DNA from: Macrostomum lignano
Taxonomy: Eukaryota
Assembly (NCBI GenBank): GCA_002269645.1
Contig: NIVC01004529.1
Location: 1-43,219 of the forward strand
Reading direction: 5' to 3'
Length of the DNA: 43,219 nucleotides
The notes beneath the pieces are model-generated. The model searched no databases and was not told the origin of the DNA. It worked only from the letters and a program-made list of their open reading frames with translations. Positions 13,400-43,219 of this stretch are shown piece by piece. The translations under genes and the position numbers were made by a program. Each line of letters starts with the position of its first letter. The first letter of the stretch is position 1.

Positions 13400-14409
13400 C
13401 ATAAGCGTAGGAACGTTTTAAAAAGTGGGGGGGGGGCAGGTTCAGTGGCGGATTAGGGGGGGGGGGCGCACAGGGTGTACGCCCCCGTCGGGTTAGATTT
13501 TTTATATGGAAAATGCACATTACTATGTACCAATTATTTTCAGAATCCGTCTTGTCAGCACTCATTTTATAAAGCGCCGCAGGCACTCATTTTAGCGCCG
13601 CAGGCACTCATTTTAGCGCCGCAGGCACTCATTTTAGCGCCACAGGCACTCATTTTGGCGCAGCAGGCACTCATTTTAGCGCCACAGGCACTCATTTTAG
13701 CGCCACAGGCACTCATTTTAGCTCCGCAGGCACTCATTTTAGCGCCGCAGGCACTCATTTTAGCGCCGCAGGCACTCATTTTAGCTCCGCAGGCACTCAT
13801 TTTAGCGCCGCAGGCACTCATTTTAGCGCCGCAGGCACTCATTTTAGCTCCGCAGGCACTCATTTTAGCGCCGCAGGCACTCATTTTAGCGCCGCAGGCA
13901 CTCATTTTAGCTCCGCAGGCACTCATTTTAGCGCCACAGGCACTCATTTTAGCGCCGCAGGCACTCATTTTAGCGCCGCAGGCACTCATTTTAGCGCCAC
14001 AGGCACTCATTTTGGCGCCGCAGGCACTCATTTTAGCGCCACAGGCACTCATTTTAGCGCCACAGGCACTCATTTTAGCGCCGCAGGCACTCATTTTAGC
14101 TCCGCAGGCACTCATTTTAGCGCCGCAGGCACTCATTTTAGCGCCACAGGCACTCATTTTAGCGCCGCAGGCACTCATTTTAGCGCCGCAGGCACTCATT
14201 TTAGCGCCACAGGCACTCATTTTGGCGCTGCAGGCGCTATGTTTTGTTGCCCTGCAGCAAAATGCATTCATGCAAAGCAGCAAAAACCAAAAATAAGCAA
14301 GAAGTCTACATTTTACTTTTAAAATGGGGGGGCACATACCATTACTGGCCCCCATTTAAAAAGCGGAGGGAGGCCATGGCCCCACTGTCCCCCCGTTCCT
14401 ACGCCGATG
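13400..14409. mobile_element. hAT-type MITE carrying an expanded 21-bp minisatellite
   Basis: TIR CATAAGCGTAGGAACG / CGTTCCTACGCCGATG; 8-bp TSD CTCCAAAG / CTCCAACG. Confidence 0.78.
13572..14236. repeat. 21-bp tandem repeat (~31 copies)
   Basis: Unit AGCGCCGCAGGCACTCATTTT; produces the spurious LAPQALI / ACGAKMS ORFs. Confidence 0.95.
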
Positions 14410-14956: not shown

Positions 14957-15551
14957 TCATTTGAAATTCGGCGGCCGTCTGCTATAGTACACAGCGCAGC
15001 TGGGACTCTTCATAGCCAGCTTATTGCTTCCGTCGGTCAGTTGGCAGCAAGCCAAAAACGGACGGACATCCACCGACCAGTGGCCGAAGATGTCCGCTCG
15101 TCGATCCGATGTTCCGGCGCCAACCGTCGGGTCCGTCAGCAGCTGACCATGATCGTCGTAGCAGCACTGCTGCCTGGCCGACGTTCCGTCAGGCAGCTCC
15201 AGCGGCCAGCTGCGCACGCAGAAGTCCGCCCCGATGTGGAAGCCGCAGTCTGGGCCGCCGCACAGCCAGGACTTCAGCCAGCTGGGTGCTGCTAGCCATG
15301 AGCCTGCATTCGTCGAACTAGACGCGGCGCCACGGCAGCAAAAGTCGCTCCGCCAGGTTCCATCGTTAACAGCAGCAGTAGCAGCGGTCGCATCGGTCGG
15401 ACAAGGATAGCGGATGCGCAGCCGGTGTAGCCAGTCTGGCACAGTTTCCGAGGCGGCTTCGGCGCGGGCCCACTCGGAGCAACGATCAGTGGCGACGTCT
15501 GACTTGGGTGGAACTTTGTTGCAGTCGCTGTCGTCGCGGCTAGTACAGAAA

Positions 15552-15584
<33 letters not shown>

Positions 15585-15664
15585 TTGTGGAGGCTGCTAA
15601 CAGAGGCTACAGACGTGGCTACCATGATGCAGCAAATCAGAATAGCGAGATAGTGCTTTGCCAT
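14957..15664 (-). CDS. Secreted AMOP-domain protein (isthmin-like, no TSR domain), 235 aa, single exon
   Basis: Hydrophobic signal peptide and a poly-Q tract, then AMOP hallmarks: C.EW..AE, CP, DFC, C.FH.GA.FCVRS, QQCCYD..G.L, GAGT, HW..DV.PF..CC, C..YY.RRPPN. Confidence 0.88.
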
Positions 15665-16400: not shown

Positions 16401-19400
16401 GCTAGTGCGCACACTCTTACGAGCGTAAATGCCCCCCATAGAACATTGTCGTTCTGCTGATTTACCTAATTGTGTCATAACTGTGCCAAATGTGCCGAAA
16501 AGGACAGCTGAGGACAATTAAAATGTGCTAATTGGCATAACTGGGGTGGTACAGTTGGCAGAATTGCAGATTTTGCTAGGACAATTATTTCCCGCCGGGA
16601 GTACGAAGTACATTTAAGTCGATGATGGTGCGCGCATCATAGTAAATATAAGAGATAGCCAATTTTGATTATATGAATCAGCAAGAAACTACATATCTCG
16701 TAGATCAAGCGTTGTGCCCGCACCATACGAATATGTACTTTTAAAGTTCAAGACTCATCAAAGCCTAATTCATCTATCCAGCTAGCTTTATTAGTACATA
16801 GCATATGTTAGTTCATACACAAACGCCTTCTTTGCCGTAGGCGCCTTCCGTTGGATCTGATGATGCCGCTGATCGTAGAATCTTGCAGTTGAATTGCAGA
16901 CTTGCCGCCCAGTATGTAGGATTTCGGCTGGAGATGGACGCCAACAGGCATTGTCTTCGCGAACAAACCGACATCCTCAGGATTGTTTGCCACGTACTGG
17001 GTGCACAAGCTGCGTCGGGTGATCCGTTGCCCACCCTCGGACACCAGCCGACTAAATGCCTCACCCGACCGGGTCAAAAAAGCCTTGCCTCCGCAGCAGC
17101 ACGTGGGACGCGACTACGCTTTTTTATCTTTTATAACAAAAAAATGTCACGAAACGCGGCGATATCGGAGCACAGTCGATCTGGTAAGGTCAGGCTGGCG
17201 CATTCAATGGTGCCTGTCTTTTTGTGAGGCACCTCCCGGATGGGCAGGCTGAAATGCGACATTGGCGACGGCAGCGTCACTGCCACCAGAGGCGGGAACC
17301 CCATCCCCAGCGATGCGGCGACGGACGATGGGGTCGTCAAAGTGGAATTGATGAAGGCCAATTCAATCAATACTGCTGCTCCCATCGTTATTACCGCGCC
17401 TGATCGCGTCAGGCCGGAACCCTGTCTGCCCGACCACCAGCGGCATCCAGCAGCATGTCGCAGAAAGCCGGCCTCACAATGCATCCCTAACGATCGGCGT
17501 TCGGCGTCGTGAAGTGTCGCTTCTCGTAGGCTCGCTGGCGGGCAGCCTTGTCCAGCATGTACTCCGCTTAAAAGGCAAATTGGAGGTCGCCTGGCAGCGG
17601 TGCGCGGAGTCACCAGCTGACCACGAAGGGCAGCAATCATGGCCTGACGTTGGCGTTGTCCATCTGTCAAATCGTACAGCGTCGCGATCCCGAGACTGCG
17701 GATGGCTATTGTTAAGCAGTTCATAGCGCCCTAGGCCGACCAGTCGCCGCCCCGCATGGATACCGCGCTCTGACTTGCGGTCAATATACTCAATTAGTTT
17801 GCTATGCACCCTTGTTGTAGCCAGCGTGGACTGGTTCCATCCCTTTCTGCCACTGCCGCAGCCGTCGCCGCCATTGTCTTCGTCATCGGACTCGACGCTA
17901 CTCGTCTGCTGTTCTGATGCAGCTGGCGCCAGACCCCTCCAGCACAAGCCGAAGGGTGCGGCAATGCTTGTGAAAGCGATGGGAATGGCGCAGATTTTTT
18001 CTGTGCGTGACTCCAAAGAGCCAACCAGATGATGCTCAGACTATCTAAGCTCTCTTCAATTGTTTTTGGAAGCTGCTGCGAAGTCGCCGACTGCTCCTCC
18101 TCCGCTGCTGCAGCTGAGCAAGCTGATCCTACTGCTGAGATGCCCGCGGCCAATGAGGCGGGAATGTGACTAGCTTCCATCGTCAACCCATTCAGATTGC
18201 GCTGCGTTACCTGTGCGTGGGTGAGTATCGGGCACAGAGAAGCTTTAGCAGGGCTCGTGCATGCCTGCTGGACTGGCTTACATGCACTCAGTCGGACACT
18301 CACCGGTAAAGTGTAAGCAGCGTCCACAGGCATTTGCTGCCCAACCATCTAAATCAGCGGTGGCCTCCAAGTGAGTGTAACTCATTCTGCATGGCGATGG
18401 TCCGCATGTCTGCCGCGGCTCTGATGACCATCGCATCCGGCGGTGTACAGAGCGAGACGCTCTGCCAAAATCTTTACCATCCCAACGAAAATTTACATGC
18501 ACATTTTAAGATTAAAATCAATTAAAGCTGCCAGAGCTGGGAATGAAGCTTAATACTCAGTGCTGCCAGTCAGCCAAGGGTATGGAAAACTTGAGGTTTC
18601 AGCCATAGACATTACTATACTGAGGAGCGTCTGTGACACAAACTCCAACCCATGGCCGATTGATTTAGTCGCACAGGACAGGCTGCGAATTTGGGGTTTA
18701 TACCATAAACTAAAAAGCAAGACTGCGCCTGACATATATCCACTAGCGCTCGACCTCGGCCTCTGGCGTGGGGCAGACATTCAAGCGGAGAGTTTGCACC
18801 ATTGACAAAAACCACTTTACCGATTGAGTTGGTAGAAAGTGGAGCCACTCGGGGCAAGCAAAAGGAGCCATTGACTCTTCTCGCAACTCTTTTCAGCTAT
18901 ACTATACTTCTGTGAGTGAGCGCGATTTGATGTTATATACTGTTACATTTGCTATACAACTATAGTGTCAACTATGATCGAAAGTCCATTGCATTGCAGC
19001 ATTGGAGCTGTGCTACAGATTAATGGAATTGAAGCAGTTGAGAGGCACTTACTTGTCTTGAACTAATTAGTACGAGTAAATGGTGTCATGAAGGCTGTAG
19101 CTACTCACTCATGCGCAATCAGCATCTCCTACCTAATTTGTGAAATTGAAAACACAAGCATTATCTAATTCTATCGTTTTTGCTATGTTTAGTAACATGT
19201 GCCTTTAAGTTTTAGAAGGCCGAATTTTGAAGGGTAGAAAATATACTTCCGGATTCCGGAAAGTTTGTTGCATAAATAATATACACGCGTGTATTCTGAG
19301 ACTGTCTGTCAAGTAGATACAGTATATAATTAGTTGTTGAAATTTTAACATTATATACATGTACGTAGATGCGAGTGCAATGTAAAATACGACAATACTT

Positions 19401-20363: not shown

Positions 20364-20864
20364 ATGACTGCCCAGCTGGTTCGTCTAACTTGGCTGATTG
20401 CAGTGGCGACCATTGCCGCCTGTGCCATTCTCTGCAGGGAAGCATCGGGGACAACAATGCCGGCAGCGTCGCCAAACTTGCATGACTGGGAGGAGCAGGC
20501 AGGCGTTGATACGGAGCTCGACTTTAATAAGCGCGGCTTTATCAACAAGCGCGGCTTCATCAACAAGCGCGGCTTCATCAACAAGCGCGGCTTTATCAAC
20601 AAGCGCAGCTTCATCAACAAGCGCGGCTTTATTAACAAGCGCGGCTTTATTAACAAGCGCGGCTTTATCAACAAGCGCGGCTTCATCAACAAGCGCGGCT
20701 TTATCAACAAGCGCGGCTTTATCAACAAGCGCGACTACTTTAAAAAGCGAGGATTTTTTGATAAGCGGCAGGACGATCTGCTTTTCCCGATGAAGGTGCG
20801 AATGTGCGTCGCCTACGGCCTGTTCTGCGATCGCATCCACGTCTGGCCGTTCCAGCAGGGATAA
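20364..20864 (+). CDS. Achatin-like (GFxD/GFxN) neuropeptide precursor, 166 aa
   Basis: Signal peptide and acidic spacer, then KR-flanked GFIN x10, SFIN x1, DYF(K), GFFD x1. Synonymous-site variation between copies (TTT/TTC, ATC/ATT) preserves the peptide. GFFD is the sequence of Aplysia GdFFD. Confidence 0.88.
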   Translation: MTAQLVRLTWLIAVATIAACAILCREASGTTMPAASPNLHDWEEQAGVDTELDFNKRGFINKRGFINKRGFINKRGFINKRSFINKRGFINKRGFINKRGFINKRGFINKRGFINKRGFINKRDYFKKRGFFDKRQDDLLFPMKVRMCVAYGLFCDRIHVWPFQQG

Positions 20865-29115: not shown

Positions 29116-29465
29116 AGCACTGACAGACACTGACAGACACTGACAGACACTGACAGACACTGGCAGACACTGACAGACACTGACAGACACTGGCAGACAC
29201 TGGCAGACACTGACAGACACTGACAGACACTGAAAGACACTGACAGACACTGACAGACATTGACAGACACTGACAGACACTGACAGACATTGACAGACAC
29301 TGACAGACACTGACAGACACTGACAGACACTGACAGACACTGACAGACACTGACAGACATTGAAAGACACTTATAGACACTGACAGACACTGATAGACAC
29401 TGACATACACTGACAGACACTGTAATCAACTGACAGACGACACTGGCAGACAGACACTGACACAA
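29116..29465. repeat. 10-bp satellite ACTGACAGAC (~35 copies)
   Basis: Direct inspection. Confidence 0.95.
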
Positions 29466-29472
29466 TGACAAA

Positions 29473-31317
29473 CTAGATGAGGTTAGATGGGGCTAGATGG
29501 GGCTAGATGGGGCTAGATGGGGCTAAATGGGGATAGATGGGGCTAGATGGGGCTAAATGGGGATAGATGGGGCTAGATGGGGTTAGATGGGGCTAGATGG
29601 GGCTAGATGGTGATAAATGGGGTTGATGGGGCTAGATGGGGATAAATGGGGCTAGATAGAGATAGATGGGGCTAGATGGTGCTAGATGAGGCTAGATGGG
29701 GCTAGATGGGGCTAGATGGGGCTAGATGGTGCTAAATGGGGATAAATGGGGCTAGATGGAGATAGATGGGGCTAGATGGTGCTAGATGAGGCTAGATGGG
29801 GCTAGATGGGGTTAGATGGTGATAAATAGGGTTGATGGGGCTAAATGGGGATAAATGGGGCTAGATGGAGATAGATGGGGCTAGATGGTGCTAGATGAGG
29901 CTACATGGGGCTAGATGGGGCTAGATGGTGCTAAATGGGGATAAATGGGGCTAGATGGAGATAGATGGGGCTAGATGGGGCTAGATGGGGTGAGATGGGG
30001 CTAGATGGGGCTAGATGGGGTTAGATGGTGATAAATGGGGTTGATGGGGCTAGATGGGGCTAGATGGTGATAAATGGGGTTGATGGGGCTAGATGGGGTT
30101 AGATGGTGATAAATGGGGTTGATGGGGCTAGATGGGGTTAGATGGTGATAAATAGGGTTGATGGGGCTAGATGGGGCTAGATGGTGATAAATGGGGTTGA
30201 TGGGGCTAGATGGGGCTAGATGGGGCTAGATGGTGATAAATGGGGTTGATGGGGCTAGATGGGGTTAGATGGTGATAAATGGGGTTGATGGGGCTAGATG
30301 GGGTTAGATGGTGATAAATGGGGTTGATGGGGCTAGATGGGGCTAGATGGTGATAAATGGGGTTGATGGGGCTAGATGGGGCTAGATGGGGCTAGATGGT
30401 GATAAATGGGGTTGATGGGGCTAGATGGGGTTAGATGGTGATAAATGGGGTTGATGGGGCTAGATGGGGCTAGATGGTGATAAATGGGGTTGATGGGGCT
30501 AGATGGGGCTAGATGGGGCTAGATGGTGATAAATGGGGTTGATGGGGCTAGATGGGGTTAGATGGTGATAAATGGGGTTGATGGGGCTAGATGGGGCTAG
30601 ATGGTGATAAATGGGGTTGATGGGGCTAGATGGGGTTAGATGGTGATAAATGGGGTTGATGGGGCTAGATGGGGCTAGATGGTGATAAATGGGGTTGATG
30701 GGGCTAGATGGGGCTAGATGGTGATAAATGGGGTTGATGGGGCTAGATGGGGCTAGATGGGGCTAGATGGTGATAAATAGGGTTGATGGGGCTAGATGGG
30801 GCTAGATGGTGATAAATGGGGTTGATGGGGCTAGATGGGGCTAGATGGTGATAAATGGGGTTGATGGGGCTAGATGGGGCTAGATGGTGATAAATGGGGT
30901 TGATGGGGCTAGATGGGGCTAGATGGTGATAAATGGGGTTGATGGGGCTAGATGGGGCTAGATGGTGATAAATGGGGTTGATGGGGCTAGATGGGGTTAG
31001 ATGGTGATAAATGGGGTTGATGGGGCTAGATGGGGCTAGATGGTGATAAATGGGGTTGATGGGGCTAGATGGGGTTAGATGGTGATAAATGGGGTTGATG
31101 GGGCTAGATGGGGCTAGATGGTGATAAATGGGGTTGATGGGGCTAGATGGGGCTAGATGGTGATAAATGGGGTTGATGGGGCTAGATGGGGTTAGATGGT
31201 GATAAATGGGGTTGATGGGGCTAGATGGGGCTAGATGGTGATAAATGGGGTTGATGGGGCTAGATGGGGCTAGATGGTGATAAATGGGGTTGATGGGGCT
31301 AGATGGGGTTAGATGAT
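29473..31317. repeat. G-rich 10-bp satellite GCTAGATGGG with higher-order repeats
   Basis: Monomer variants GGGGCTAGAT, GGGGTTAGAT, GGTGATAAAT and the 9-bp GGGGTTGAT, recurring as ~39/49-bp higher-order blocks over ~1.85 kb. Confidence 0.95.
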
Positions 31318-32240: not shown

Positions 32241-32627
32241 ATGCGGCTGATCCCGTTGCTAAGCCTGTCGCTAATCCTTGCAATCGGAGGCGCTCGGGCC
32301 AGCTGGCCAGCCAATCACATCAACAGCCTGTCCGACATCCGCTGCCGCCAATGGTGCACCTTCCGGTTTCACTCGGGCTCGCGTCGCGTGTTTGTCGGTC
32401 CCGACGCCGAGCTGCGGCCGTTTCTTGTCAGCAACTATGTCAAGCGAATGCAGGACAGGCATCGGGCCGAGCTGACAGCCGAGATGAGCGACAACATGCG
32501 CCGGTTCCGCGAGTACTACTCGAGCCAGCGGGCGGGTGGCACGCTCCGCGAGTCCGGTGACAGCACCCTGGGCTGGTTCAACCTGTACCACGATTACCTG
32601 CACTGTCTGCGGGACTGCTTCGACTGA
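32241..32627 (+). CDS. Small secreted protein of unknown family (128 aa; CRQWC ... CLRDC)
   Basis: Clear signal peptide MRLIPLLSLSLILAIGGARA, GC3-rich codons like the other genes, and four Cys as two CX3C motifs at opposite ends of the mature chain. Confidence 0.78.
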   Translation: MRLIPLLSLSLILAIGGARASWPANHINSLSDIRCRQWCTFRFHSGSRRVFVGPDAELRPFLVSNYVKRMQDRHRAELTAEMSDNMRRFREYYSSQRAGGTLRESGDSTLGWFNLYHDYLHCLRDCFD

Positions 32628-32696: not shown

Positions 32697-33051
<355 letters not shown>

Positions 33052-33311
33052 CTGCTTGACTTGTACTGGCGGTTGGCTAAAAAAACCAACAGCCATGTAC
33101 TTTCCGCAAAATCCAGTCAGACATTTTCCCCAACTCGCTGCCATTCCCACAGAGGCTCAGAGGTCCATGGACAAAGCCAGAGTCACACGCGCATGTATTC
33201 AAGTACATAGCAGTCTAAAGAATTGCGTGAATTATGAAGAGTCGCCCAGAAAATTCTTTGTTCTTTTACTGCATTGATTGGGGCAAAGTGTCTGGCCATC
33301 ACAGAGGGAAC

Positions 33312-36300
33312 ACTACTAAGGGATTCCGTAAGGCGCGATTTTGGAGGTGGGGTGGGTGTCAACCCTCCTCGCCTCTCATTGGCTGGCGCCCCGATCACTA
33401 GGTGATCGATACCCGTATCGATATCGGCGACTCGAACCCGCGACCCTCCCCAGCCGCAGGCGCACCTACCGATATTAGATCCCAATAAATCAATCAGATC
33501 CCAAATCAATCAGATCCCAAATCAATCAGATCCCAAGCGCACCCTCCCGAGCCGCAGGCGCCCATGCAGCAGGCGCCCATGCCGCAGGCACCCCGAGTGT
33601 ACACTCTCCCGATATGTGTGTACACCGATATGTAGTCATCGATACGGGCCTCTTCCCCTCTCTCACCTACATCTCAACTAGCGAAATCGAACCCAGGTCG
33701 CGCCCATACTAGGACACTACACGGTTGTGGGGTATAGGGAGCGAGAAGTTTCAACCCTAACGCTGACGCAGCCCTGTACAGTGAGAGTGTACGGGCAGAG
33801 AGGGGTGGGGCGGACAGAGAACCAGCCACTAGGTTGTTATACTGTTGAAGCATAGGGAGCGAGAAGTTTTAACCCCGATGCTGACGCAGCCCTGTACACT
33901 GAGCGTGTACGGGCAGAGGGTGGGTGGAAAGAGATGTGAATAACACAGCCTGCTGCAGGAGCCGGATAGAGAGGCGCATGCTAGGACAGAGAGGTAGTGT
34001 GAGTCACACACACCCCACAGAGAAAGCCATACAGAGGATAGAGAGCTCCCTCCCCAGTTGCAGGGGACAGAGAGGCAGGCAGGGTATGCAGGGGCATGCG
34101 AACCGTCAAGGGGCCACGCGAGGATAGAGTGGAGGAGCAGAGATGTGTTTGGACAGAGAGCCAGCCACGTGTGCGTAGTGTGAGGGAACAGAAACATATG
34201 GAGCAGGAGGGAGATAGGAAGCAAACGCGCAGGGTAAGGGAGCCATGCAGCAGGGAGCAGTGTACAGTGAGACACGGGCAGGGGTGGAGCCGTGCGTGGA
34301 CAGAGCTGAACGGCACGGTCAGCTGCAGGAATAAGATGATAGAGAGGCGCGGAGGGGACAGAGAGCAGTGTGCAGGGTAGGCAGCCACGCAGGCTGGGGA
34401 ACAGAGAGGCGCGTGTCAGCCAGTTACAGCCCGGGACAGAGAAGTATGAAGGGGGCCTGGGACAGAGAAGTATGAAGGGGGGCCTGGGACAGAGTTGCGA
34501 GCAAGGCACAGAGAGAGGTAGGGTCCGGTAGCTATGTATAGGCAGGGACCCACGCGAGGGCAGGACAGGGCATGCAAGGCATGCAAATTACATGCAAGGG
34601 CAGTGAGGTGTGCGCGGAGGGAGACAGAGAGCAGTGTGTAGGGGTAGGTAACAGCAAACTTTAGTAGAGGCGCGTGCGGGGACGGAGAAACCAGTCTGAG
34701 CGTACAGAGACGTTACAGAGAGGTACACAAACAGAGACCAAAGCGGGCAGAGCACGTGTAGGGACAGAGACGTGAGGGAGAATAGACCAAAACACGCTAT
34801 GTATTTTCAAAAGTTGGTTTTAGTGCAGCATATTTAATAGCGGGTAGTATAATAGTATGTACATAGTAGGTATAATGGTAGTAATAATAGTAAGTATATT
34901 AGCCCAAAAGGTAGGCTAAAACAGGCTAAACTGTGTGTACGCATCCTCATCACCCCACAAGCCCCCTCTCCCGCCAGACTCACTCTTCCATACCCTCCTG
35001 TATTGCTGTATGAAGGAAAATATAGTGTAAAAATACAGATCTTAACCGTCAGACCGCTGAAATCAGGGCACACTAGAGGGGTTTCGGGGTCTGCATGCTC
35101 TATGTAAGCTGTTTCAATTATGTTTTGAAAAAACTAGGGGCTTAAATACAACGTTTTATTCAAAAAGTAGGTTATTTTAATGAAATAGCTGACACAATCA
35201 TTGTCGAGAGTAGAAATTTTTATAAGAAACCAGGCATTTTAGCAAAAATAAACCTTCAAACCACATAAAATTGAATAAAAAGCAGACATTTTCAATTATA
35301 AACCGCAAGTATTTTAATAGAAAAGTAAGCAAACAAGGCACAAAACCAGCAAATTTTACCTTTTTATTTTAATGTTACTGATAAGGTAGAGAGTAGAAAC
35401 TTGTGAGCTGTACGGAGTTAGAAAGTATTAACCATTATGTATCGTATGAATTATTAGTTCAGTACCAGCCATTGGTCAAGCGAGCATTTATGAAGTTATT
35501 ACGAGTGATGAAGGGATAGAGAGCTATATACAGGAAGACAGTATCCTTCTAAACCACCACGAACAGATTGCTAATAGAGATAAGCTTTGTCTGTGTGCAG
35601 TATGAGTAAGCGAAGGCGGGGCAAATACTTTTCCACATGCCGGACAGAACAGTATTGTGCTAGGATTTCTCTCGAAATCACGGTACGTTACTAGTTTTTA
35701 TCACACCATCCAGATGCGTCAACTAGTCAGCAGTAGTCATTTATATGTTATTAGAACTTACAAACCCAGGTCAAGTAAATATTACAAAGAGTATATTACG
35801 TACACACGCCAACTCCGAATACCAAGCCATACTAGTCTACTTGCAGTGCTCCTGGAGGGAAGGGACGGCGGGGTGTACACCCGGCAGGGTGGGCGTCCAG
35901 CGAGTGTACATCTGACAGGATGGGTGTTCAGCAAGTATACATCTGACAGGGTGGGCGTTCAGCAAGTGTACCTTCAGCGTCGAGTAGGTGTACACCCGTC
36001 AGTGGGGAACTCCACCCCTCCCACCAATGTCGTGTGCATGCGGTTAGTCAGTATAGTGGTGGGGTAGACGGTGCAGGAAGGAAACCCAGATGCTGACGCT
36101 GCCCTGTACAGCGAGCAACCAGCCCCCTGTAGCAGGAGGGGGACAGAGAGTGCGTGGAGGCAGTAGGAGATAGAGGACGCTACCCGGCATGTCGCAGCAC
36201 GCGGCGCGGGACAGAGGCAGTGTGTAAGTCACCCCCGCGGAGAGAGCTCCCCTGGCAGGAGGCGCGGGACAGAGAGGCGGTGAATCACACCCCACGGAGA

Positions 36301-39300
36301 GAGCCGTACAACGAGCTTCCCCACCCGAGTCCGGTAAATATTACAGAGTATTACGTGCACACACCAGCCCTGAATACCAAGCCATACTAGTCTATCTGCA
36401 GTGCTCCCAGAGGGAAGGGATGGTCAGGAGTTACACACCAAGAATGCATTCATACAAAGAGTACACAACTCGAGCCCAGACACCAAGTCACAGTCTACTT
36501 ACAGTAGAGATGGTAGATTAATAGCAAGATTATATTACAATTAGACCTCTCTAGCACATGAGGAGTGAAATTCAATAATAATTGAATTCAATAATAATAC
36601 AACATTTAGACGTAGTAATTTAATTACAAAATACCACTAACACTGAGCCAACGAATTGTAGGTTACAAAGGAGTTGCCACTCATATGGAAAGCCAGTATA
36701 ATGCAGGTGTGTATTATTAAAACATAGACAAAAACGATGCAGACGTATATACACACTATTGATTTTGTACATGTACATTTCGGCATATTACCACACATCG
36801 CGGGCACATATTATATATCGGGGGATAGGTTAAAATACACACATCGTAGATGTAGAAGCAGACACAATGCAGGAAAATTATGATACGAGTGTACATATTA
36901 GTGCGTAAAAGTATCATATTATGACACCCTGTAGCACATATTGACATAATGCAGGGGAAAATATTGACAGAAATAGTACACAATTGTAGAGGTAACAACC
37001 AGCCAACTAGTAAGGGCATCCAGCACTTGTTCAGGTTTTTTTTATTTCGAGACGAGTGTCATGCCCCCGCAAGAGATCTTATCAGAAATTTGTTGAACTC
37101 CACTGCAACTCTCCCCAGAGCCTCCAAATGGGAGTTTTAACACTTGAGGGGATCCCGCTCAATGTACAGTGCGGACGGAGAGGGGTAACAGAAAGCGCTG
37201 CATCAGACCGCGGAGCTGCATTCCTCCCCGAGGTAGGCGCGTCAGCTCCCACTCCTCATTTAACCATCAAGTAAACTAAAGAAGTCAAGCAGAAAGCCTT
37301 ACAATCACCCGCAACCAGCACAAGTAAGAGTACTTTCCACTAGAGAGCCATAGTGCAAGATTCGCGAGCCAAGTTGAAGAAGCACACCAAATTACACTAA
37401 AGACATATGTATTAAAAAGCATACCGGCACCTCTACAAAAACACAGTATGTACCGATTAAAGTTGCTTTTGGTGCAGTGTATTTAATAAAAAGCAGGTAC
37501 CTAACACAAAAGTAGGCATCAATGCAGTGCACGGGCTAAACTGTATTTACAAACGCAGGGCAACGAACTACACACAATGTAGCGCATAGACATAATTGTA
37601 CACATAAATGTACGCAATTTCCGGTATATAGGACCAAATGTACGCAAATGTACACAATGTACACAAACACACACACACTCAGGCGTATTCACAGCAAGAG
37701 CTTCCTGCCGATGGCGCCATCGCCTGCGGCGATCGGTGCTGCAGGATGCGCTGCAGGATGCGCCTGAGTGTGTGTGTGTTTGTGTGCATTGTGTACATTT
37801 GCGTACATTTGGTCCTATATACCGGAGATTGCGTACATTTATGTGTACAATTATGTCTATGCGCTACATTGTGTGTAGTTCGTTGCCCTGCGTTTGTAAA
37901 TACAGTTTAGCCCGTGCACTGCATTGATGCCTACTTTTGTGTTAGGTACCTGCTTTTTATTAAATACACTGCACCAAAAGCAACTTTAATCGGTACATAC
38001 TGTGTTTTTGTAGAGGTGCCGGTATGCTTTTTAATACATATGTCTTTAGTGTAATTTGGTGTGCTTCTTCAACTTGGCTCGCGAATCTTGCACTATGGCT
38101 CTCTAGTGGAAAGTACTCTTACTTGTGCTGGTTGCGGGTGATTGTAAGGCTTTCTGCTTGACTTCTTTAGTTTACTTGATGGTTAAATGAGGAGTGGGAG
38201 CTGACGCGCCTACCTCGGGGGAGGAATGCAGCTCCGCGGTCTGATGCAGCGCTTTCTGTTACCCCTCTCCGTCCGCACTGTACATTGAGCGGGATCCCCT
38301 CAAGTGTTAAAACTCCCATTTGGAGGCTCTGGGGAGAGTTGCAGTGGAGTTCAACAAATTTCTGATAAGATCTCTTGCGGGGGCATGACACTCGTCTCGA
38401 AATAAAAAAAACCTGAACAAGTGCTGGATGCCCTTACTAGTTGGCTGGTTGTTACCTCTACAATTGTGTACTATTTCTGTCAATATTTTCCCCTGCATTA
38501 TGTCAATATGTGCTACAGGGTGTCATAATATGATACTTTTACGCACTAATATGTACACTCGTATCATAATTTTCCTGCATTGTGTCTGCTTCTACATCTA
38601 CGATGTGTGTATTTTAACCTATCCCCGATATATAATATGTGCCCGCGATGTGTGGTAATATGCCGAAATGTACATGTACAAAATCAATAGTGTGTATATA
38701 CGTCTGCATCGTTTTTGTCTATGTTTTAATAATACACACCTGCATTATACTGGCTTTCCATATGAGTGGCAACTCCTTTGTAACCTACAATTCGTTGGCT
38801 CAGTGTTAGTGGTATTTTGTAATTAAATTACTACGTCTAAATGTTGTATTATTATTGAATTCAATTATTATTGAATTTCACTCCTCATGTGCTAGAGAGG
38901 TCTAATTGTAATATAATCTTGCTATTAATCTACCATCTCTACTGTAAGTAGACTGTGACTTGGTGTCTGGGCTCGAGTTGTGTACTCTTTGTATGAATGC
39001 ATTCTTGGTGTGTAACTCCTGACCATCCCTTCCCTCTGGGAGCACTGCAGTAGACTAGTATGGCTTGGTATTCAGGGCTGGTGTGTGCACGTAATACTCT
39101 GTAATATTTACCGGACTCGGGTGGGGAAGCTCGTTGTACGGCTCTCTCCGTGGGGTGTGATTCACCGCCTCTCTGTCCCGCGCCTCCTGCCAGGGGAGCT
39201 CTCTCCGCGGGGGTGACTTACACACTGCCTCTGTCCCGCGCGCGTGCTGCGACATGCCGGGTAGCGTCCTCTATCTCCTACTGCCTCCACGCACTCTCTG

Positions 39301-42130
39301 TCCCCCTCCTGCTACAGGGGGCTGGTTGCTCGCTGTACAGGGCAGCGTCAGCATCTGGGTTTCCTTCCTGCACCGTCTACCCCACCACTATACTGACTAA
39401 CCGCATGCACACGACATTGGTGGGAGGGGTGGAGTTCCCCACTGACGGGTGTACACCTACTCGACGCTGAAGGTACACTTGCTGAACGCCCACCCTGTCA
39501 GATGTACACTTGCTGAACACCCATCCTGTCAGATGTACACTCGCTGGACGCCCACCCTGCCGGGTGTACACCCCGCCGTCCCTTCCCTCCAGGAGCACTG
39601 CAAGTAGACTAGTATGGCTTGGTATTCGGAGTTGGCGTGTGTACGTAATATACTCTTTGTAATATTTACTTGACCTGGGTTTGTAAGTTCTAATAACATA
39701 TAAATGACTACTGCTGACTAGTTGACGCATCTGGATGGTGTGATAAAAACTAGTAACGTACCGTGATTTCGAGAGAAATCCTAGCACAATACTGTTCTGT
39801 CCGGCATGTGGAAAAGTATTTGCCCCGCCTTCGCTTACTCATACTGCACACAGACAAAGCTTATCTCTATTAGCAATCTGTTCGTGGTGGTTTAGAAGGA
39901 TACTGTCTTCCTGTATATAGCTCTCTATCCCTTCATCACTCGTAATAACTTCATAAATGCTCGCTTGACCAATGGCTGGTACTGAACTAATAATTCATAC
40001 GATACATAATGGTTAATACTTTCTAACTCCGTACAGCTCACAAGTTTCTACTCTCTACCTTATCAGTAACATTAAAATAAAAAGGTAAAATTTGCTGGTT
40101 TTGTGCCTTGTTTGCTTACTTTTCTATTAAAATACTTGCGGTTTATAATTGAAAATGTCTGCTTTTTATTCAATTTTATGTGGTTTGAAGGTTTATTTTT
40201 GCTAAAATGCCTGGTTTCTTATAAAAATTTCTACTCTCGACAATGATTGTGTCAGCTATTTCATTAAAATAACCTACTTTTTGAATAAAACGTTGTATTT
40301 AAGCCCCTAGTTTTTTCAAAACATAATTGAAACAGCTTACATAGAGCATGCAGACCCCGAAACCCCTCTAGTGTGCCCTGATTTCAGCGGTCTGACGGTT
40401 AAGATCTGTATTTTTACACTATATTTTCCTTCATACAGCAATACAGGAGGGTATGGAAGAGTGAGTCTGGCGGGAGAGGGGGCTTGTGGGGTGATGAGGA
40501 TGCGTACACACAGTTTAGCCTGTTTTAGCCTACCTTTTGGGCTAATATACTTACTATTATTACTACCATTATACCTACTATGTACATACTATTATACTAC
40601 CCGCTATTAAATATGCTGCACTAAAACCAACTTTTGAAAATACATAGCGTGTTTTGGTCTATTCTCCCTCACGTCTCTGTCCCTACACGTGCTCTGCCCG
40701 CTTTGGTCTCTGTTTGTGTACCTCTCTGTAACGTCTCTGTACGCTCAGACTGGTTTCTCCGTCCCCGCACGCGCCTCTACTAAAGTTTGCTGTTACCTAC
40801 CCCTACACACTGCTCTCTGTCTCCCTCCGCGCACACCTCACTGCCCTTGCATGTAATTTGCATGCCTTGCATGCCCTGTCCTGCCCTCGCGTGGTCCCTG
40901 CCTATACATAGCTACCGGACCCTACCTCTCTCTGTGCCTTGCTCGCAACTCTGTCCCAGGCCCCCCTTCATACTTCTCTGTCCCAGGCCCCCTTCATACT
41001 TCTCTGTCCCGGGCTGTAACTGGCTGACACGCGCCTCTCTGTTCCCCAGCCTGCGTGGCTGCCTACCCTGCACACTGCTCTCTGTCCCCCTCCGCGCCTC
41101 TCTATCATCCTATTCCTGCAGCTGACCGTGCCGTTCAGCTCTGTCCACGCACGGCTCCACCCCTGCCCGTGTCTCACTGTACACTGCTCCCTGCTGCATG
41201 GCTCCCTTACCCTGCGCGTTTGCTTCCTATCTCCCTCCTGCTCCATATGTTTCTGTTCCCTCACACTACGCACACGTGGCTGGCTCTCTGTCCAAACACA
41301 TCTCTGCTCCTCCACTCTATCCTCGCGTGGCCCCTTGACGGTTCGCATGCCCCTGCATACCCTGCCTGCCTCTCTGTCCCCTGCAACTGGGGAGGGAGCT
41401 CTCTATCCTCTGTATGGCTTTCTCTGTGGGGTGTGTGTGACTCACACTACCTCTCTGTCCTAGCATGCGCCTCTCTATCCGGCTCCTGCAGCAGGCTGTG
41501 TTATTCACATCTCTTTCCACCCACCCTCTGCCCGTACACGCTCAGTGTACAGGGCTGCGTCAGCATCGGGGTTAAAACTTCTCGCTCCCTATGCTTCAAC
41601 AGTATAACAACCTAGTGGCTGGTTCTCTGTCCGCCCCACCCCTCTCTGCCCGTACACTCTCACTGTACAGGGCTGCGTCAGCGTTAGGGTTGAAACTTCT
41701 CGCTCCCTATACCCCACAACCGTGTAGTGTCCTAGTATGGGCGCGACCTGGGTTCGATTTCGCTAGTTGAGATGTAGGTGAGAGAGGGGAAGAGGCCCGT
41801 ATCGATGACTACATATCGGTGTACACACATATCGGGAGAGTGTACACTCGGGGTGCCTGCGGCATGGGCGCCTGCTGCATGGGCGCCTGCGGCTCGGAGG
41901 GTGCGCTTGGGATCTGATTGATTTGGGATCTGATTGATTTGGGATCTGATTGATTTATTGGGATCTAATATCGGTAGGTGCGCCTGCGGCTGGGGAGGGT
42001 CGCGGGTTCGAGTCGCCGATATCGATACGGGTATCGATCACCTAGTGATCGGGGCGCCAGCCAATGAGAGGCGAGGAGGGTTGACACCCACCCACCTCCA
42101 AAATCGCGCCTTACGGAATCCCTTAGTAGT
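33312..42130. mobile_element. 8.8-kb foldback (palindromic) non-autonomous element with target-site duplication
   Basis: Left arm 33312-37685 is the reverse complement of right arm 37761-42130, with a 75-bp spacer. GGGAAC lies at 33306-33311 and 42131-42136. Termini are ACTACTAAGGGATTCC...GGAATCCCTTAGTAGT. No recognisable protein is encoded. Confidence 0.85.
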
Positions 42131-43219
42131 GGGAACTGCTGCTCCCTTAGACTGGCCCCCGCTGTGAACCCCGCCTTTCAATGCTTGTTGCAGTACAATG
42201 CTTTTTTGTTTTCCCCTTAATTTGTTTCAAGCTCAGACAATTTTCACTATACCTGCTACCGACTGATTCCTGCAGGGCAACCTGCTTGACAAGAGTCACA
42301 GACAAATGCGAATTACGGATGAAAAATCTTTTTTAAGATTAAAATTTATTGTTTTTGTGTTTGTTTCTTAAATTTCCATGAACTTTGGGGTCCAACCCCT
42401 GTAAATGAGTGTATATGCTTGACAAGGACTTTTACTAGTTTAAATCTGCCTCGGGACGCTTTTATTCAACCCTTCACGTTTCCATTGGCAACAAAAGTTT
42501 CTGGATAAAATTCCTTCTCACACGCTGATCAAACAGTGCTTGCCGTGGAGAAGCCTATCTATCTGCTGGTACGTCGGCTGATCGAAGCCCAGTCAAGCAG
42601 GACAGCAATAAGACCCTGTCACAGCCCATGCAGTCTGAATCCGGTCGATTGTTTAATCAGTTTGAACCTATATGGAACAGTTGCAGTTGTAATTGCAATT
42701 GGCAAACGTGAGAGTCATTTCTAAGAAAATCGAGTCTAACGTCCTTCTATTTCAGCAGTTGAAAGACGCAATTTTTGCTTTCATATTCCATCTTTATCGA
42801 GAATGGAAGTTTTAAATTTTTGGCACTAAATTAACAATTTCTTACCGATTGTGGACTTAAAATTTGCAAAGTATTTCGATAAAAGCTAAATTTGAAAGTT
42901 GACCAATTTAAATTTGAAAATGCATCGATTGAAGATTGGAAACTGTGAGTGTTTTTTTTTCCTGTGTTTATATGTTTCTCATCACGGATTTTTCGTCACT
43001 TTTACATCAGTTATGCGATTTGATTGCTCACTTGATGGCAGTGTGAACAAGTCCTCAGTGTTGTTATCCAATGAATGCTGTAATCATGTAGGAATTACTG
43101 AGAGGTCAAGGCTCATGGGGGTTTCTGAAATGCTGTGACTCATGTGGGTTAAAAGTTACATGCAGTTTATTCAAAAAATTTTACTCCTCTGTTTGTTGCC
43201 TCCCCAGCGGGGGGGGGCA

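What the first reader, a model, noticed from the sequence alone, without database searches (positions are those of the whole stretch)
33312..42130. Giant 8.8-kb non-coding foldback element with 4.4-kb arms, inserted as a unit
Seen: the arms (4374 and 4370 bp) are near-identical reverse complements around a 75-bp spacer, and unrelated flanks share a direct repeat. I spotted about ten arm differences by eye: homopolymer-type indels plus at least four transitions (e.g. CAATTTCCGG vs CAATCTCCGG; AAGTATACA vs AAGTGTACA). No transposase, integrase or polymerase motif is visible in any ORF. Knowledge: palindromes this long with a tiny spacer are usually unstable, and ordinary MITE or Polinton TIRs are far shorter. 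Inference: this is a young, mobilised 'snap-back' replicon or foldback element. One end of a parent element was copied through a hairpin to give two functional ends, then integrated in trans. It may represent an undescribed family of giant non-autonomous elements.
Basis: partly seen in the sequence, partly recalled or inferred. Interest (0 to 1): 0.88.

Follow-up and report, generated by a model that had tools for sequence, protein, structure and literature searches.

The report
Young foldback transposon in flatworm genome
An 8.8-kb, protein-less DNA palindrome in the flatworm Macrostomum lignano is a genuine, recent insertion of a 'foldback'-type jumping gene; this kind of element is already known, but here the two arms are unusually long and almost identical.

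Summary
Two 4.4-kb arms (33311-37685 and 37761-42131) are reverse complements around a 75-nt centre. They differ by 4 transitions and 8 one-base indels, 7 of them in G/C runs. The window is a whole contig of Macrostomum lignano (NIVC01004529.1). So this is a discrete 8.8-kb insertion with a target-site duplication, not an assembly fold-back. The duplication is ambiguous: 4 bp (GGAA, ends CACTACT...AGTAGTG) or 6 bp (GGGAAC, ends ACTACT...AGTAGT). No protein or RNA family is detectable in the arms. The terminal 400 nt holds a roughly 20-fold enriched CGATA/TATCG motif cluster. The 75-nt centre is itself a decayed palindrome, and arm mismatches concentrate next to it. That fits fold-back priming at a short inverted repeat that copied one transposon end. 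The arms (0.09 % diverged) are about 14 times more alike than the homeologous contigs (about 1.3 %). Best reading: a young, non-autonomous foldback-type cut-and-paste element, possibly of the CACTA/CMC type. It is a new family of a known structural class, not a new category. Copy number and the mobilising enzyme could not be tested with these tools.

The parts
33306..33310 (.). Left copy of the target-site duplication. It is GGAA (33307-33310) if the element starts at 33311, or GGGAAC (33306-33311) if it starts at 33312.
   Evidence: The empty site on the homeolog has this sequence once.
33311..37685 (+). Left arm of the palindrome (4375 nt).
33311..33351 (+). Outermost 41 nt, perfectly complementary to 42091-42131. 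Starts CACTACTAAGGG. This is the candidate terminal inverted repeat proper.
   Evidence: pair I15; only two matches in the window, with 0 expected by chance.
33400..33650 (+). Subterminal cluster of short motifs in both orientations (CGATA/TATCG 8 times, ATCGATA 3 times, CCGATAT 3 times), plus a 16-nt tandem array (33487-33536) and a 15-nt tandem array (33554-33593). These are candidate transposase-binding sites.
   Evidence: 20 per kb in the first 400 nt, against 0.9 per kb in the rest of the window and 0.5 per kb in the rest of the arm. for the arrays.
33730..34810 (+). Purine-rich domain of degenerate repeat units, each carrying GGACAGAGA-type cores in one orientation only. It includes a 118-nt duplication (33734-33805 and 33852-33923) and a 26-nt array (34429-34494).
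   Evidence: GGACAGAGA occurs 10 times in the arm and 0 times in the other 33 kb.
34811..35660 (+). AT-rich (37 % GC) unique segment of the arm with no recognisable content.
35764..36423 (+). Internal 555-nt-spaced duplication (35764-35868 and 36323-36423, 82-87 % identical) bracketing a 31-nt array (35873-35971).
37619..37685 (+). Innermost 67 nt of the arm, which carries 2 of the 4 arm substitutions. It reads as the outer part of an older, imperfect short inverted repeat.
   Evidence: Binomial p is about 1.4e-3 (my calculation).
37686..37760 (.). Centre ('spacer', 75 nt). It is itself a degenerate palindrome whose hairpin loop (about 37725-37727) lies within 3 nt of the arms' symmetry centre (37723). 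It contains a 12-nt tandem repeat (37738-37763).
   Evidence: self-complementarity score 14, against -6.6 +/- 6.3 in shuffles, reached by 1 of 500..
37761..42131 (-). Right arm of the palindrome (4371 nt), the reverse complement of the left arm.
42132..42136 (.). Right copy of the target-site duplication. It is GGAA (42132-42135) or GGGAAC (42131-42136).

Best explanation
This is a non-autonomous, foldback-type cut-and-paste DNA transposon. It inserted recently into one of the three homeologous subgenomes of Macrostomum lignano. Shown: the whole 8.8-kb palindrome is absent from the homeologous locus, which keeps one copy of the duplicated target. The element encodes nothing recognisable. Its two arms are about 14 times more similar to each other than the two homeologous contigs are. 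Inferred: it was moved in trans by a transposase that recognises the terminal 41-nt repeat and the subterminal CGATA/TATCG motif cluster. With the 4-bp reading, the ends (CACTA core, 5'-CA...TG-3') fall within the CACTA/Mirage/Chapaev/Transib clade. Inferred: the palindrome arose when a parent element broke just beyond a short imperfect inverted repeat. That repeat is now the 75-nt centre plus about 70 nt on each side. The 3' end folded back on it and primed synthesis that copied the remaining half out to its terminus. The result has two identical, functional ends. The asymmetric centre then protects the palindrome from cruciform-driven loss. If transcribed, the arms would form a 4.4-kb double-stranded RNA.
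For: Empty site and duplication. Host and contig identity. DV1 has three subgenomes diverged 1.4-2.4 % with negligible heterozygosity (PMC10733133). The two contigs differ by 216 substitutions in 16,878 aligned unique bases, or 1.28 %. The arms differ by 4 in 4,369, or 0.09 %. Non-coding. No gene is annotated anywhere in 22241-42627 except the ankyrin gene and a 128-aa ORF. Subterminal motif enrichment of about 20-fold. Arm domains with internal tandem repeats, as in foldback elements: compared with Tetris (PMC4079207). End rule: CMCT-clade elements share 5'-CA..TG-3' termini and make 2-5 bp duplications (PMC12730594), and the CACTA core is the hallmark of the CACTA superfamily, which occurs in flatworms (PMC1636069). 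Centre anatomy. Fold-back priming at natural short inverted repeats next to a break gives inverted duplications in yeast (PMC10622511).
Against: Only one copy is known, and no flatworm DNA beyond two loci could be searched. So repetitiveness, other insertion sites and an autonomous partner are all untested. Any palindromic fragment has inverted ends automatically, so the 'TIR' is not independent evidence of a transposon. The case therefore rests on the duplication, the CACTA-type end and the subterminal motif cluster. The duplication length is ambiguous (4 or 6 bp). CACTA/EnSpm proper makes 3-bp duplications and the flatworm CACTA relative SmTRC1 makes 2-bp duplications with CCC ends, so neither matches exactly. 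The arms are mostly unique sequence and not the long tandem arrays typical of FB or Tetris. No read-level validation of the assembly was possible.
Confidence: 0.68

Rival explanations
1. An ordinary, asymmetric element with short inverted ends inserted here. It became a palindrome afterwards, in place. Intra-element template switching or gene conversion started from the terminal repeats and replaced one half with an inverted copy of the other ('TIR elongation').
For: The age of the insertion is bounded only by the subgenome split, whereas the arms are far younger. Elongation of TIRs with loss of the transposase gene has been proposed as the origin of foldback structures in several lineages (PMC4079207).
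Against: It needs a conversion tract that stops exactly at the element boundary on one side and at a shared centre on the other. It does not predict that the centre is itself a decayed palindrome with mismatches concentrated next to it. There is no remnant of a different right half.
Confidence: 0.14
2. A non-transposon palindromic DNA fragment, for example a fold-back product of broken DNA, was captured at a staggered chromosome break. Fill-in of the overhangs produced the 4-6 bp duplication.
For: Any palindrome has inverted ends without needing a transposase. Only a single copy is known.
Against: The CACTA-type end and the roughly 20-fold subterminal motif cluster are unexpected for a random fragment. 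The junctions are clean, with no filler or deletion. No donor sequence is visible in the 68 kb of M. lignano DNA available.
Confidence: 0.07
3. A defective 'snap-back' derivative of a self-synthesising, protein-primed element (Polinton/Maverick-like) integrated with a 6-bp duplication.
For: The 6-bp reading (GGGAAC) is allowed. Six base pairs is the usual Polinton value (my own knowledge). Such elements have long terminal repeats and replicate through panhandle intermediates (PMC4046053).
Against: The defining feature is a protein-primed family-B polymerase with integrase and capsid genes in a 15-20 kb element. 4.4 kb copied from one end should contain remnants of these genes, yet 91 translated pieces have no Pfam match and two ORFs have no homologs. 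There is no match in the viral contig collection.
Confidence: 0.05
4. A sequencing or assembly artefact, in which a palindromic chimeric long read (missed hairpin adapter) was built into the contig.
For: The assembly is Canu on PacBio CLR reads (PMC5730564). The element lies 1.1 kb from the contig end. The arm differences are mostly homopolymer indels.
Against: A missed-adapter palindrome would return into the reverse complement of the left flank. Here the right arm instead joins the genuine right flank, which is collinear with the homeolog, exactly at a target duplication. The centre is an asymmetric 75-nt sequence with its own decayed symmetry. At most, the middle of the element could be misjoined.
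Confidence: 0.05

Closest known systems
Foldback (FB-like) transposons: Drosophila FB, Galileo, Tetris; also described in sea urchin, midge and plants
   Same: Long inverted arms make up almost the whole element. The arms have an outer flanking domain, internal tandem or degenerate repeats and an inner domain. The middle domain is small and non-coding. There are no ORFs, and there is a target duplication. [quoted passage not shown]
   Different: The arms here are 4.4 kb, against up to 1,735 bp in Tetris. They are mostly unique sequence instead of long tandem arrays. The middle domain is only 75 nt. The duplication is 4 or 6 bp, not the 8-10 bp of the Mutator-like majority. The host is a flatworm.
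CACTA/EnSpm-Mirage-Chapaev-Transib (CMCT) clade of DDE transposons, including SmTRC1 of Schistosoma mansoni
   Same: The end starts with the CACTA core and the termini are 5'-CA...TG-3'. A 4-bp duplication lies inside the clade's 2-5 bp range. Members exist in flatworms. Subterminal motif clusters are typical of CACTA elements (my own knowledge).
   Different: EnSpm proper gives 3 bp. SmTRC1 gives 2 bp with CCC ends. Transib gives strictly 5 bp with a second conserved block in a 38-nt end. No transposase could be linked to this element.
Break-induced foldback inversions (inverted duplications) in yeast and cancer genomes
   Same: A short natural inverted repeat next to a break folds back and primes fill-in synthesis. 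This yields a large palindrome whose centre keeps the original short repeat and its loop (PMC10622511). That matches the decayed-palindrome centre and the mismatch gradient seen here.
   Different: Those products are chromosome-scale and end in dicentrics. Here the copied segment ends at a transposon terminus and sits as a bounded insertion.
Mu killer of maize, a natural inverted duplication of part of MuDR that silences the family through hairpin RNA (my own knowledge, not checked here)
   Same: It is an inverted duplication of one end of a transposon and could produce long double-stranded RNA.
   Different: There is no evidence here of transcription, small RNAs or a target family.
Polinton/Maverick self-synthesising elements
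   Same: The 6-bp duplication is possible, and these elements have long terminal inverted repeats.
   Different: There are no polymerase, integrase, ATPase, protease or capsid remnants. The size is 8.8 kb, not 15-20 kb.

Membership tests
Foldback-type transposons (structural class) | Long terminal inverted repeats that make up most of the element, around a short middle domain | tested here: met
   Arms of 4375 and 4371 nt around 75 nt.
Foldback-type transposons (structural class) | Internal tandem or degenerate repeats within the arms | tested here: met
   16-, 15-, 26- and 31-nt arrays, 118- and 555-nt duplications, and GGACAGAGA cores 10 times in one orientation. They are a minority of the arm length.
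Foldback-type transposons (structural class) | No coding capacity (non-autonomous) and a target-site duplication | tested here: met
   for coding capacity. for the duplication and the empty site.
Foldback-type transposons (structural class) | A family of dispersed copies in the genome | not testable with these tools
   No collection on hand holds flatworm DNA. There are 0 further copies in the window, the homeolog, or the metagenome and viral collections.
CACTA/EnSpm (CMC) | [quoted passage not shown] | tested here: met
   CACTACT...AGTAGTG under the 4-bp reading. Rule taken.
CACTA/EnSpm (CMC) | 3-bp duplication (2 bp in animal TRC/Mirage-type elements) | tested here: not met
   Only 4 or 6 bp are compatible with symmetric ends. 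The wider CMCT range of 2-5 bp is met by the 4-bp reading.
CACTA/EnSpm (CMC) | A partner element with the same ends that encodes a Transposase_21-type DDE enzyme | not testable with these tools
   No way to search the M. lignano genome or proteome by terminus.
Transib | Precise 5-bp duplication | tested here: not met
   5 bp is possible only if the two ends are unequal. Rule taken from PMC1131882.
Transib | CAC at positions 1-3, plus two conserved A residues in a nonamer-like block of the 38-nt end | tested here: inconclusive
   CAC is present. At the positions expected for 12 +/- 1 or 23 +/- 1 spacers, at most one of the two A residues is found (read; rule).
hAT (including the 5- and 6-bp variants) | The third base of the terminus is always G | tested here: not met
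   The third base is C (CAC...) or T (ACT...). Rule from the Fig. S7 legend of PMC1131882. The hAT5 and hAT6 variants are noted.
Mutator/Foldback superfamily | 8-10 bp duplication | tested here: not met
   4 or 6 bp. Rule.
Polinton/Maverick | Protein-primed family-B polymerase, integrase and capsid genes in a 15-20 kb element | tested here: not met
   No Pfam match in 91 pieces. The element is 8.8 kb. Definition.
Polinton/Maverick | 6-bp duplication | tested here: inconclusive
   GGGAAC is one of two symmetric readings. The 6-bp rule is from my own knowledge.
LTR retrotransposon | Direct long terminal repeats with TG...CA ends | tested here: not met
   The repeats are inverted and the ends read CA...TG.

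The most novel reading that the evidence does not exclude
The element is not a derivative of a cut-and-paste transposon. It is an integrated 'snap-back' defective genome of a linear, self-replicating (protein-primed or hairpin-ended) element of flatworms, inserted with a 6-bp duplication. Alternatively, it is a transposon-end palindrome kept because its 4.4-kb hairpin RNA silences the parent family.
Probability: 0.08. Interest if true: 0.7.

Novelty: new member of a known kind. Interest (0 to 1): 0.38.

Why it matters
It is a clean, datable example of a very long near-perfect palindrome carried stably in an animal germline genome, and the unoccupied homeologous site is preserved for comparison. 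It indicates DNA-transposon activity in M. lignano after its recent genome duplication. Published repeat annotation for this species says little about DNA transposons, which are listed as 3 % of the genome without detail. The decayed-palindrome centre gives a concrete, sequence-level model for how foldback elements are born from one end of an ordinary transposon. Long insertions are also the main source of divergence between the subgenomes (32-36 % when they are counted), so elements like this matter for assembling and interpreting this model genome.

Tried and rejected
1. I first misread the junction and noted a 5-bp duplication (GGAAC) pointing to Transib. A scripted enumeration showed that only 4 bp or 6 bp fit symmetric ends. 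The Transib lead was dropped and the notebook corrected.
2. Searches for other copies or a coding partner found nothing. These covered the arm against the rest of the window, the terminus with up to 3 mismatches in the window and the homeolog, exact terminus scans of the metagenome and viral contig collections, exact look-up of four arm ORFs, and homology searches with two arm ORFs. None of these collections holds flatworm genomic DNA, so the negatives say little about copy number.
3. The HMMER scan of 1.84 billion representatives returned two hits (E 1e-6 and 7e-6). They were rejected as spurious because 25-30-residue low-complexity stretches match five times in tandem-repeat proteins.
4. The Rfam permissive scan hit a miRNA-precursor model at the apex on both strands, at 45 bits against a gathering score of 100. 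This just reflects the hairpin with its (CA)n stem.
5. The third homeologous contig (274,883 bp) could not be reached. Its nearest recorded gene lies about 16 kb from the site, and the 128-aa ORF next to the site is recorded only on the window contig.
6. One literature search for Transib in flatworms was badly framed and returned nothing relevant.
All end rules cited here come from the papers read.


Full report
OBSERVATION

An inverted-repeat scan and a gapped alignment of the two halves confirm a palindrome from 33311 to 42131. The left arm is 33311-37685, the centre is 37686-37760 (75 nt) and the right arm is 37761-42131. The arms share 4365 matched positions. They differ by four substitutions, all transitions (at 34334, 35937, 37619 and 37660), and by eight one-base indels. 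Seven of the indels lie in G or C runs. The assembly is Canu on PacBio CLR reads polished with short reads (PMC5730564). Short reads cannot be placed uniquely in two identical arms, so I take most of the indels to be residual consensus errors (inference).

SOURCE OF THE WINDOW

Exact look-up of window ORFs shows that the window is the whole 43,219-bp contig NIVC01004529.1 of the Macrostomum lignano assembly GCA_002269645.1. The window carries an AMOP-domain gene, a 911-aa ankyrin-repeat gene and many minisatellites. The DV1 line has three homeologous subgenomes (S, L1, L2). They are diverged by 1.4-2.4 %, with negligible heterozygosity within each (PMC10733133).

THE EMPTY SITE

The ankyrin protein is also encoded on contig NIVC01001985.1. 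That contig is collinear with the window on both sides of the element. L003 3961-4452 matches window 42611-42128, and L003 4444-5056 matches window 33311-32697. At the junction it reads CATCACAGAGGGAACTGCTGC with nothing in between.

A scripted enumeration shows two symmetric ways to divide the junction:
- Element 33311-42131, with ends CACTACT...AGTAGTG and a 4-bp duplication (GGAA).
- Element 33312-42130, with ends ACTACT...AGTAGT and a 6-bp duplication (GGGAAC).
A 5-bp duplication needs unequal ends. I had first misread the junction as 5 bp and corrected this.

The empty site has no footprint, which favours insertion into the window's copy over excision from the other (inference).

This also disposes of the simple artefact hypothesis. 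A missed-adapter palindromic read would run back into the left flank. Here the right arm joins the true right flank exactly at the duplication.

AGE

Over 16,878 aligned bases of unique DNA the two contigs differ by 216 substitutions, or 1.28 %. This is in line with the published subgenome divergence. The arms differ by 0.09 %. So the arms were last identical far more recently than the subgenomes split, either because the palindrome is young or because the arms are kept alike by conversion.

CONTENT

- None of 91 stop-to-stop translated pieces of one arm plus the centre matches Pfam.
- Two arm ORFs have no relative in 5.8 billion protein clusters.
- A full HMMER scan of 1.84 billion representatives gave only two spurious low-complexity hits.
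- Rfam gave nothing at gathering thresholds and only a sub-threshold hairpin look-alike at the apex.
- No tRNA genes were found.
- The public annotation places no gene in the element.

ANATOMY OF THE ARM

- A 41-nt perfect terminal repeat.
- A subterminal cluster of CGATA/TATCG-type motifs in both orientations. There are 8 in the first 400 nt, or 20 per kb, against 0.9 per kb in the rest of the window.
- 16-nt and 15-nt tandem arrays.
- A 1.1-kb purine-rich domain of degenerate units. Each carries a GGACAGAGA core, 10 times in one orientation and never in the other 33 kb of the window.
- An AT-rich unique stretch.
- A further duplicated block with a 31-nt array.

This layout of flanking domain, repeat domain, inner domain and tiny middle is the layout described for foldback transposons (PMC4079207).

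THE CENTRE

The 75-nt 'spacer' is not random. It is significantly self-complementary, with a score reached by only 1 of 500 shuffles. Its hairpin loop lies within 3 nt of the arms' symmetry centre. Two of the four arm substitutions fall in the innermost 67 nt (binomial p about 1.4e-3). So identity decays towards the centre: the middle is strongly diverged, the next 70 nt are about 3 % diverged, and the remaining 4.3 kb are about 0.05 % diverged.

This is what fold-back priming predicts. A break occurs next to a pre-existing short imperfect inverted repeat. The 3' end anneals on that repeat, and synthesis copies everything beyond it. The old imperfect repeat survives as the centre of a new, otherwise perfect palindrome. 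The mechanism is demonstrated in yeast (PMC10622511). The asymmetric centre should also make the palindrome more stable than a perfect one (my own knowledge of palindrome biology).

CLASSIFICATION OF THE ENDS

Using rules taken from papers only:
- The CACTA core is the hallmark of the CACTA/EnSpm superfamily.
- The wider EnSpm-Mirage-Chapaev-Transib clade shares 5'-CA..TG-3' termini and makes 2-5 bp duplications. The 4-bp reading fits that envelope.
- It does not fit EnSpm proper (3 bp), the flatworm relative SmTRC1 (2 bp, CCC ends) or Transib (strict 5 bp).
- hAT is excluded by the third base of the end.
- The Mutator-like majority of foldback elements is excluded by their 8-10 bp duplications.
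- The 6-bp reading would allow Polinton-type integration, but the defining genes are absent.
- Because any palindrome has inverted ends, the transposon case rests on the duplication, the end motif and the subterminal cluster. It does not rest on the 'TIR' as such.

WHAT REMAINS UNKNOWN

- Copy number.
- Whether other copies are palindromic.
- The true duplication length.
- The mobilising enzyme.
- Whether the arms are transcribed.

None of the DNA collections on hand contains flatworm genomes, and the scans that were possible were negative. The third homeolog could not be reached.

VERDICT

The element is best read as a young, non-autonomous foldback-type transposon. It is a new family, possibly of CACTA/CMC type, within a known structural class, and is notable for 4.4-kb arms and a 75-nt centre. 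It is not a new category of element, and nothing supports a Polinton or replicon origin beyond the ambiguous 6-bp reading.

Noticed in passing
window 20364-20864 (+); L003 17119-17745: An annotated 166-aa secreted protein is built from an 18-nt tandem repeat that encodes the unit NKRGFI about 11 times behind a signal-peptide-like start. It resembles a repetitive pro-peptide precursor. The homeologous copy is 208 aa, so the repeat number differs between subgenomes.
   Followed up: partly
window 42603-42821: The window carries about 219 bp in the right flank that the homeolog lacks. The boundaries share CAG, and there are no inverted ends. It is a plain indel between subgenomes. An AT-rich stretch near 42870 is in turn longer in the homeolog.
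   Followed up: partly
window 32241-32627 (+): A 128-aa ORF with a signal-peptide-like start is annotated on this contig, 680 bp upstream of the element. It is intact (97.7 % identical) but unannotated on the homeolog. It has no Pfam match on record.
   Followed up: partly
window 29473-31315, 32697-33051, 13573-14235, 29118-29422: There are very large minisatellite and microsatellite arrays: a 10-nt unit repeated about 188 times with 39/78-nt higher order and strong G skew, (TAGA) about 89 times directly left of the insertion, a 21-nt unit about 32 times, and a 10-nt unit about 30 times. The arrays differ in length between the homeologs.
   Followed up: no
window 37661-37785: The apex hairpin gives a sub-threshold match on both strands to the Rfam miRNA-precursor model mir-3149 (45 bits against a gathering score of 100). 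This reflects hairpin shape and a (CA)n stem, not a family member.
   Followed up: yes
window 34334, 35937, 37619, 37660: At all four arm substitutions the left arm has A or T where the right arm (read in the same sense) has G or C. None is at a CpG. With only four sites the one-sidedness is not significant (1 in 8).
   Followed up: partly
window 14957-15664 (-) and 17131-17724 (-): An AMOP-domain protein and a 197-aa protein each have near-identical paralogs on the 215,985-bp contig. A 57-aa fragment of the latter is also annotated on a third contig of 274,883 bp, consistent with three homeologous copies of this region.
   Followed up: partly
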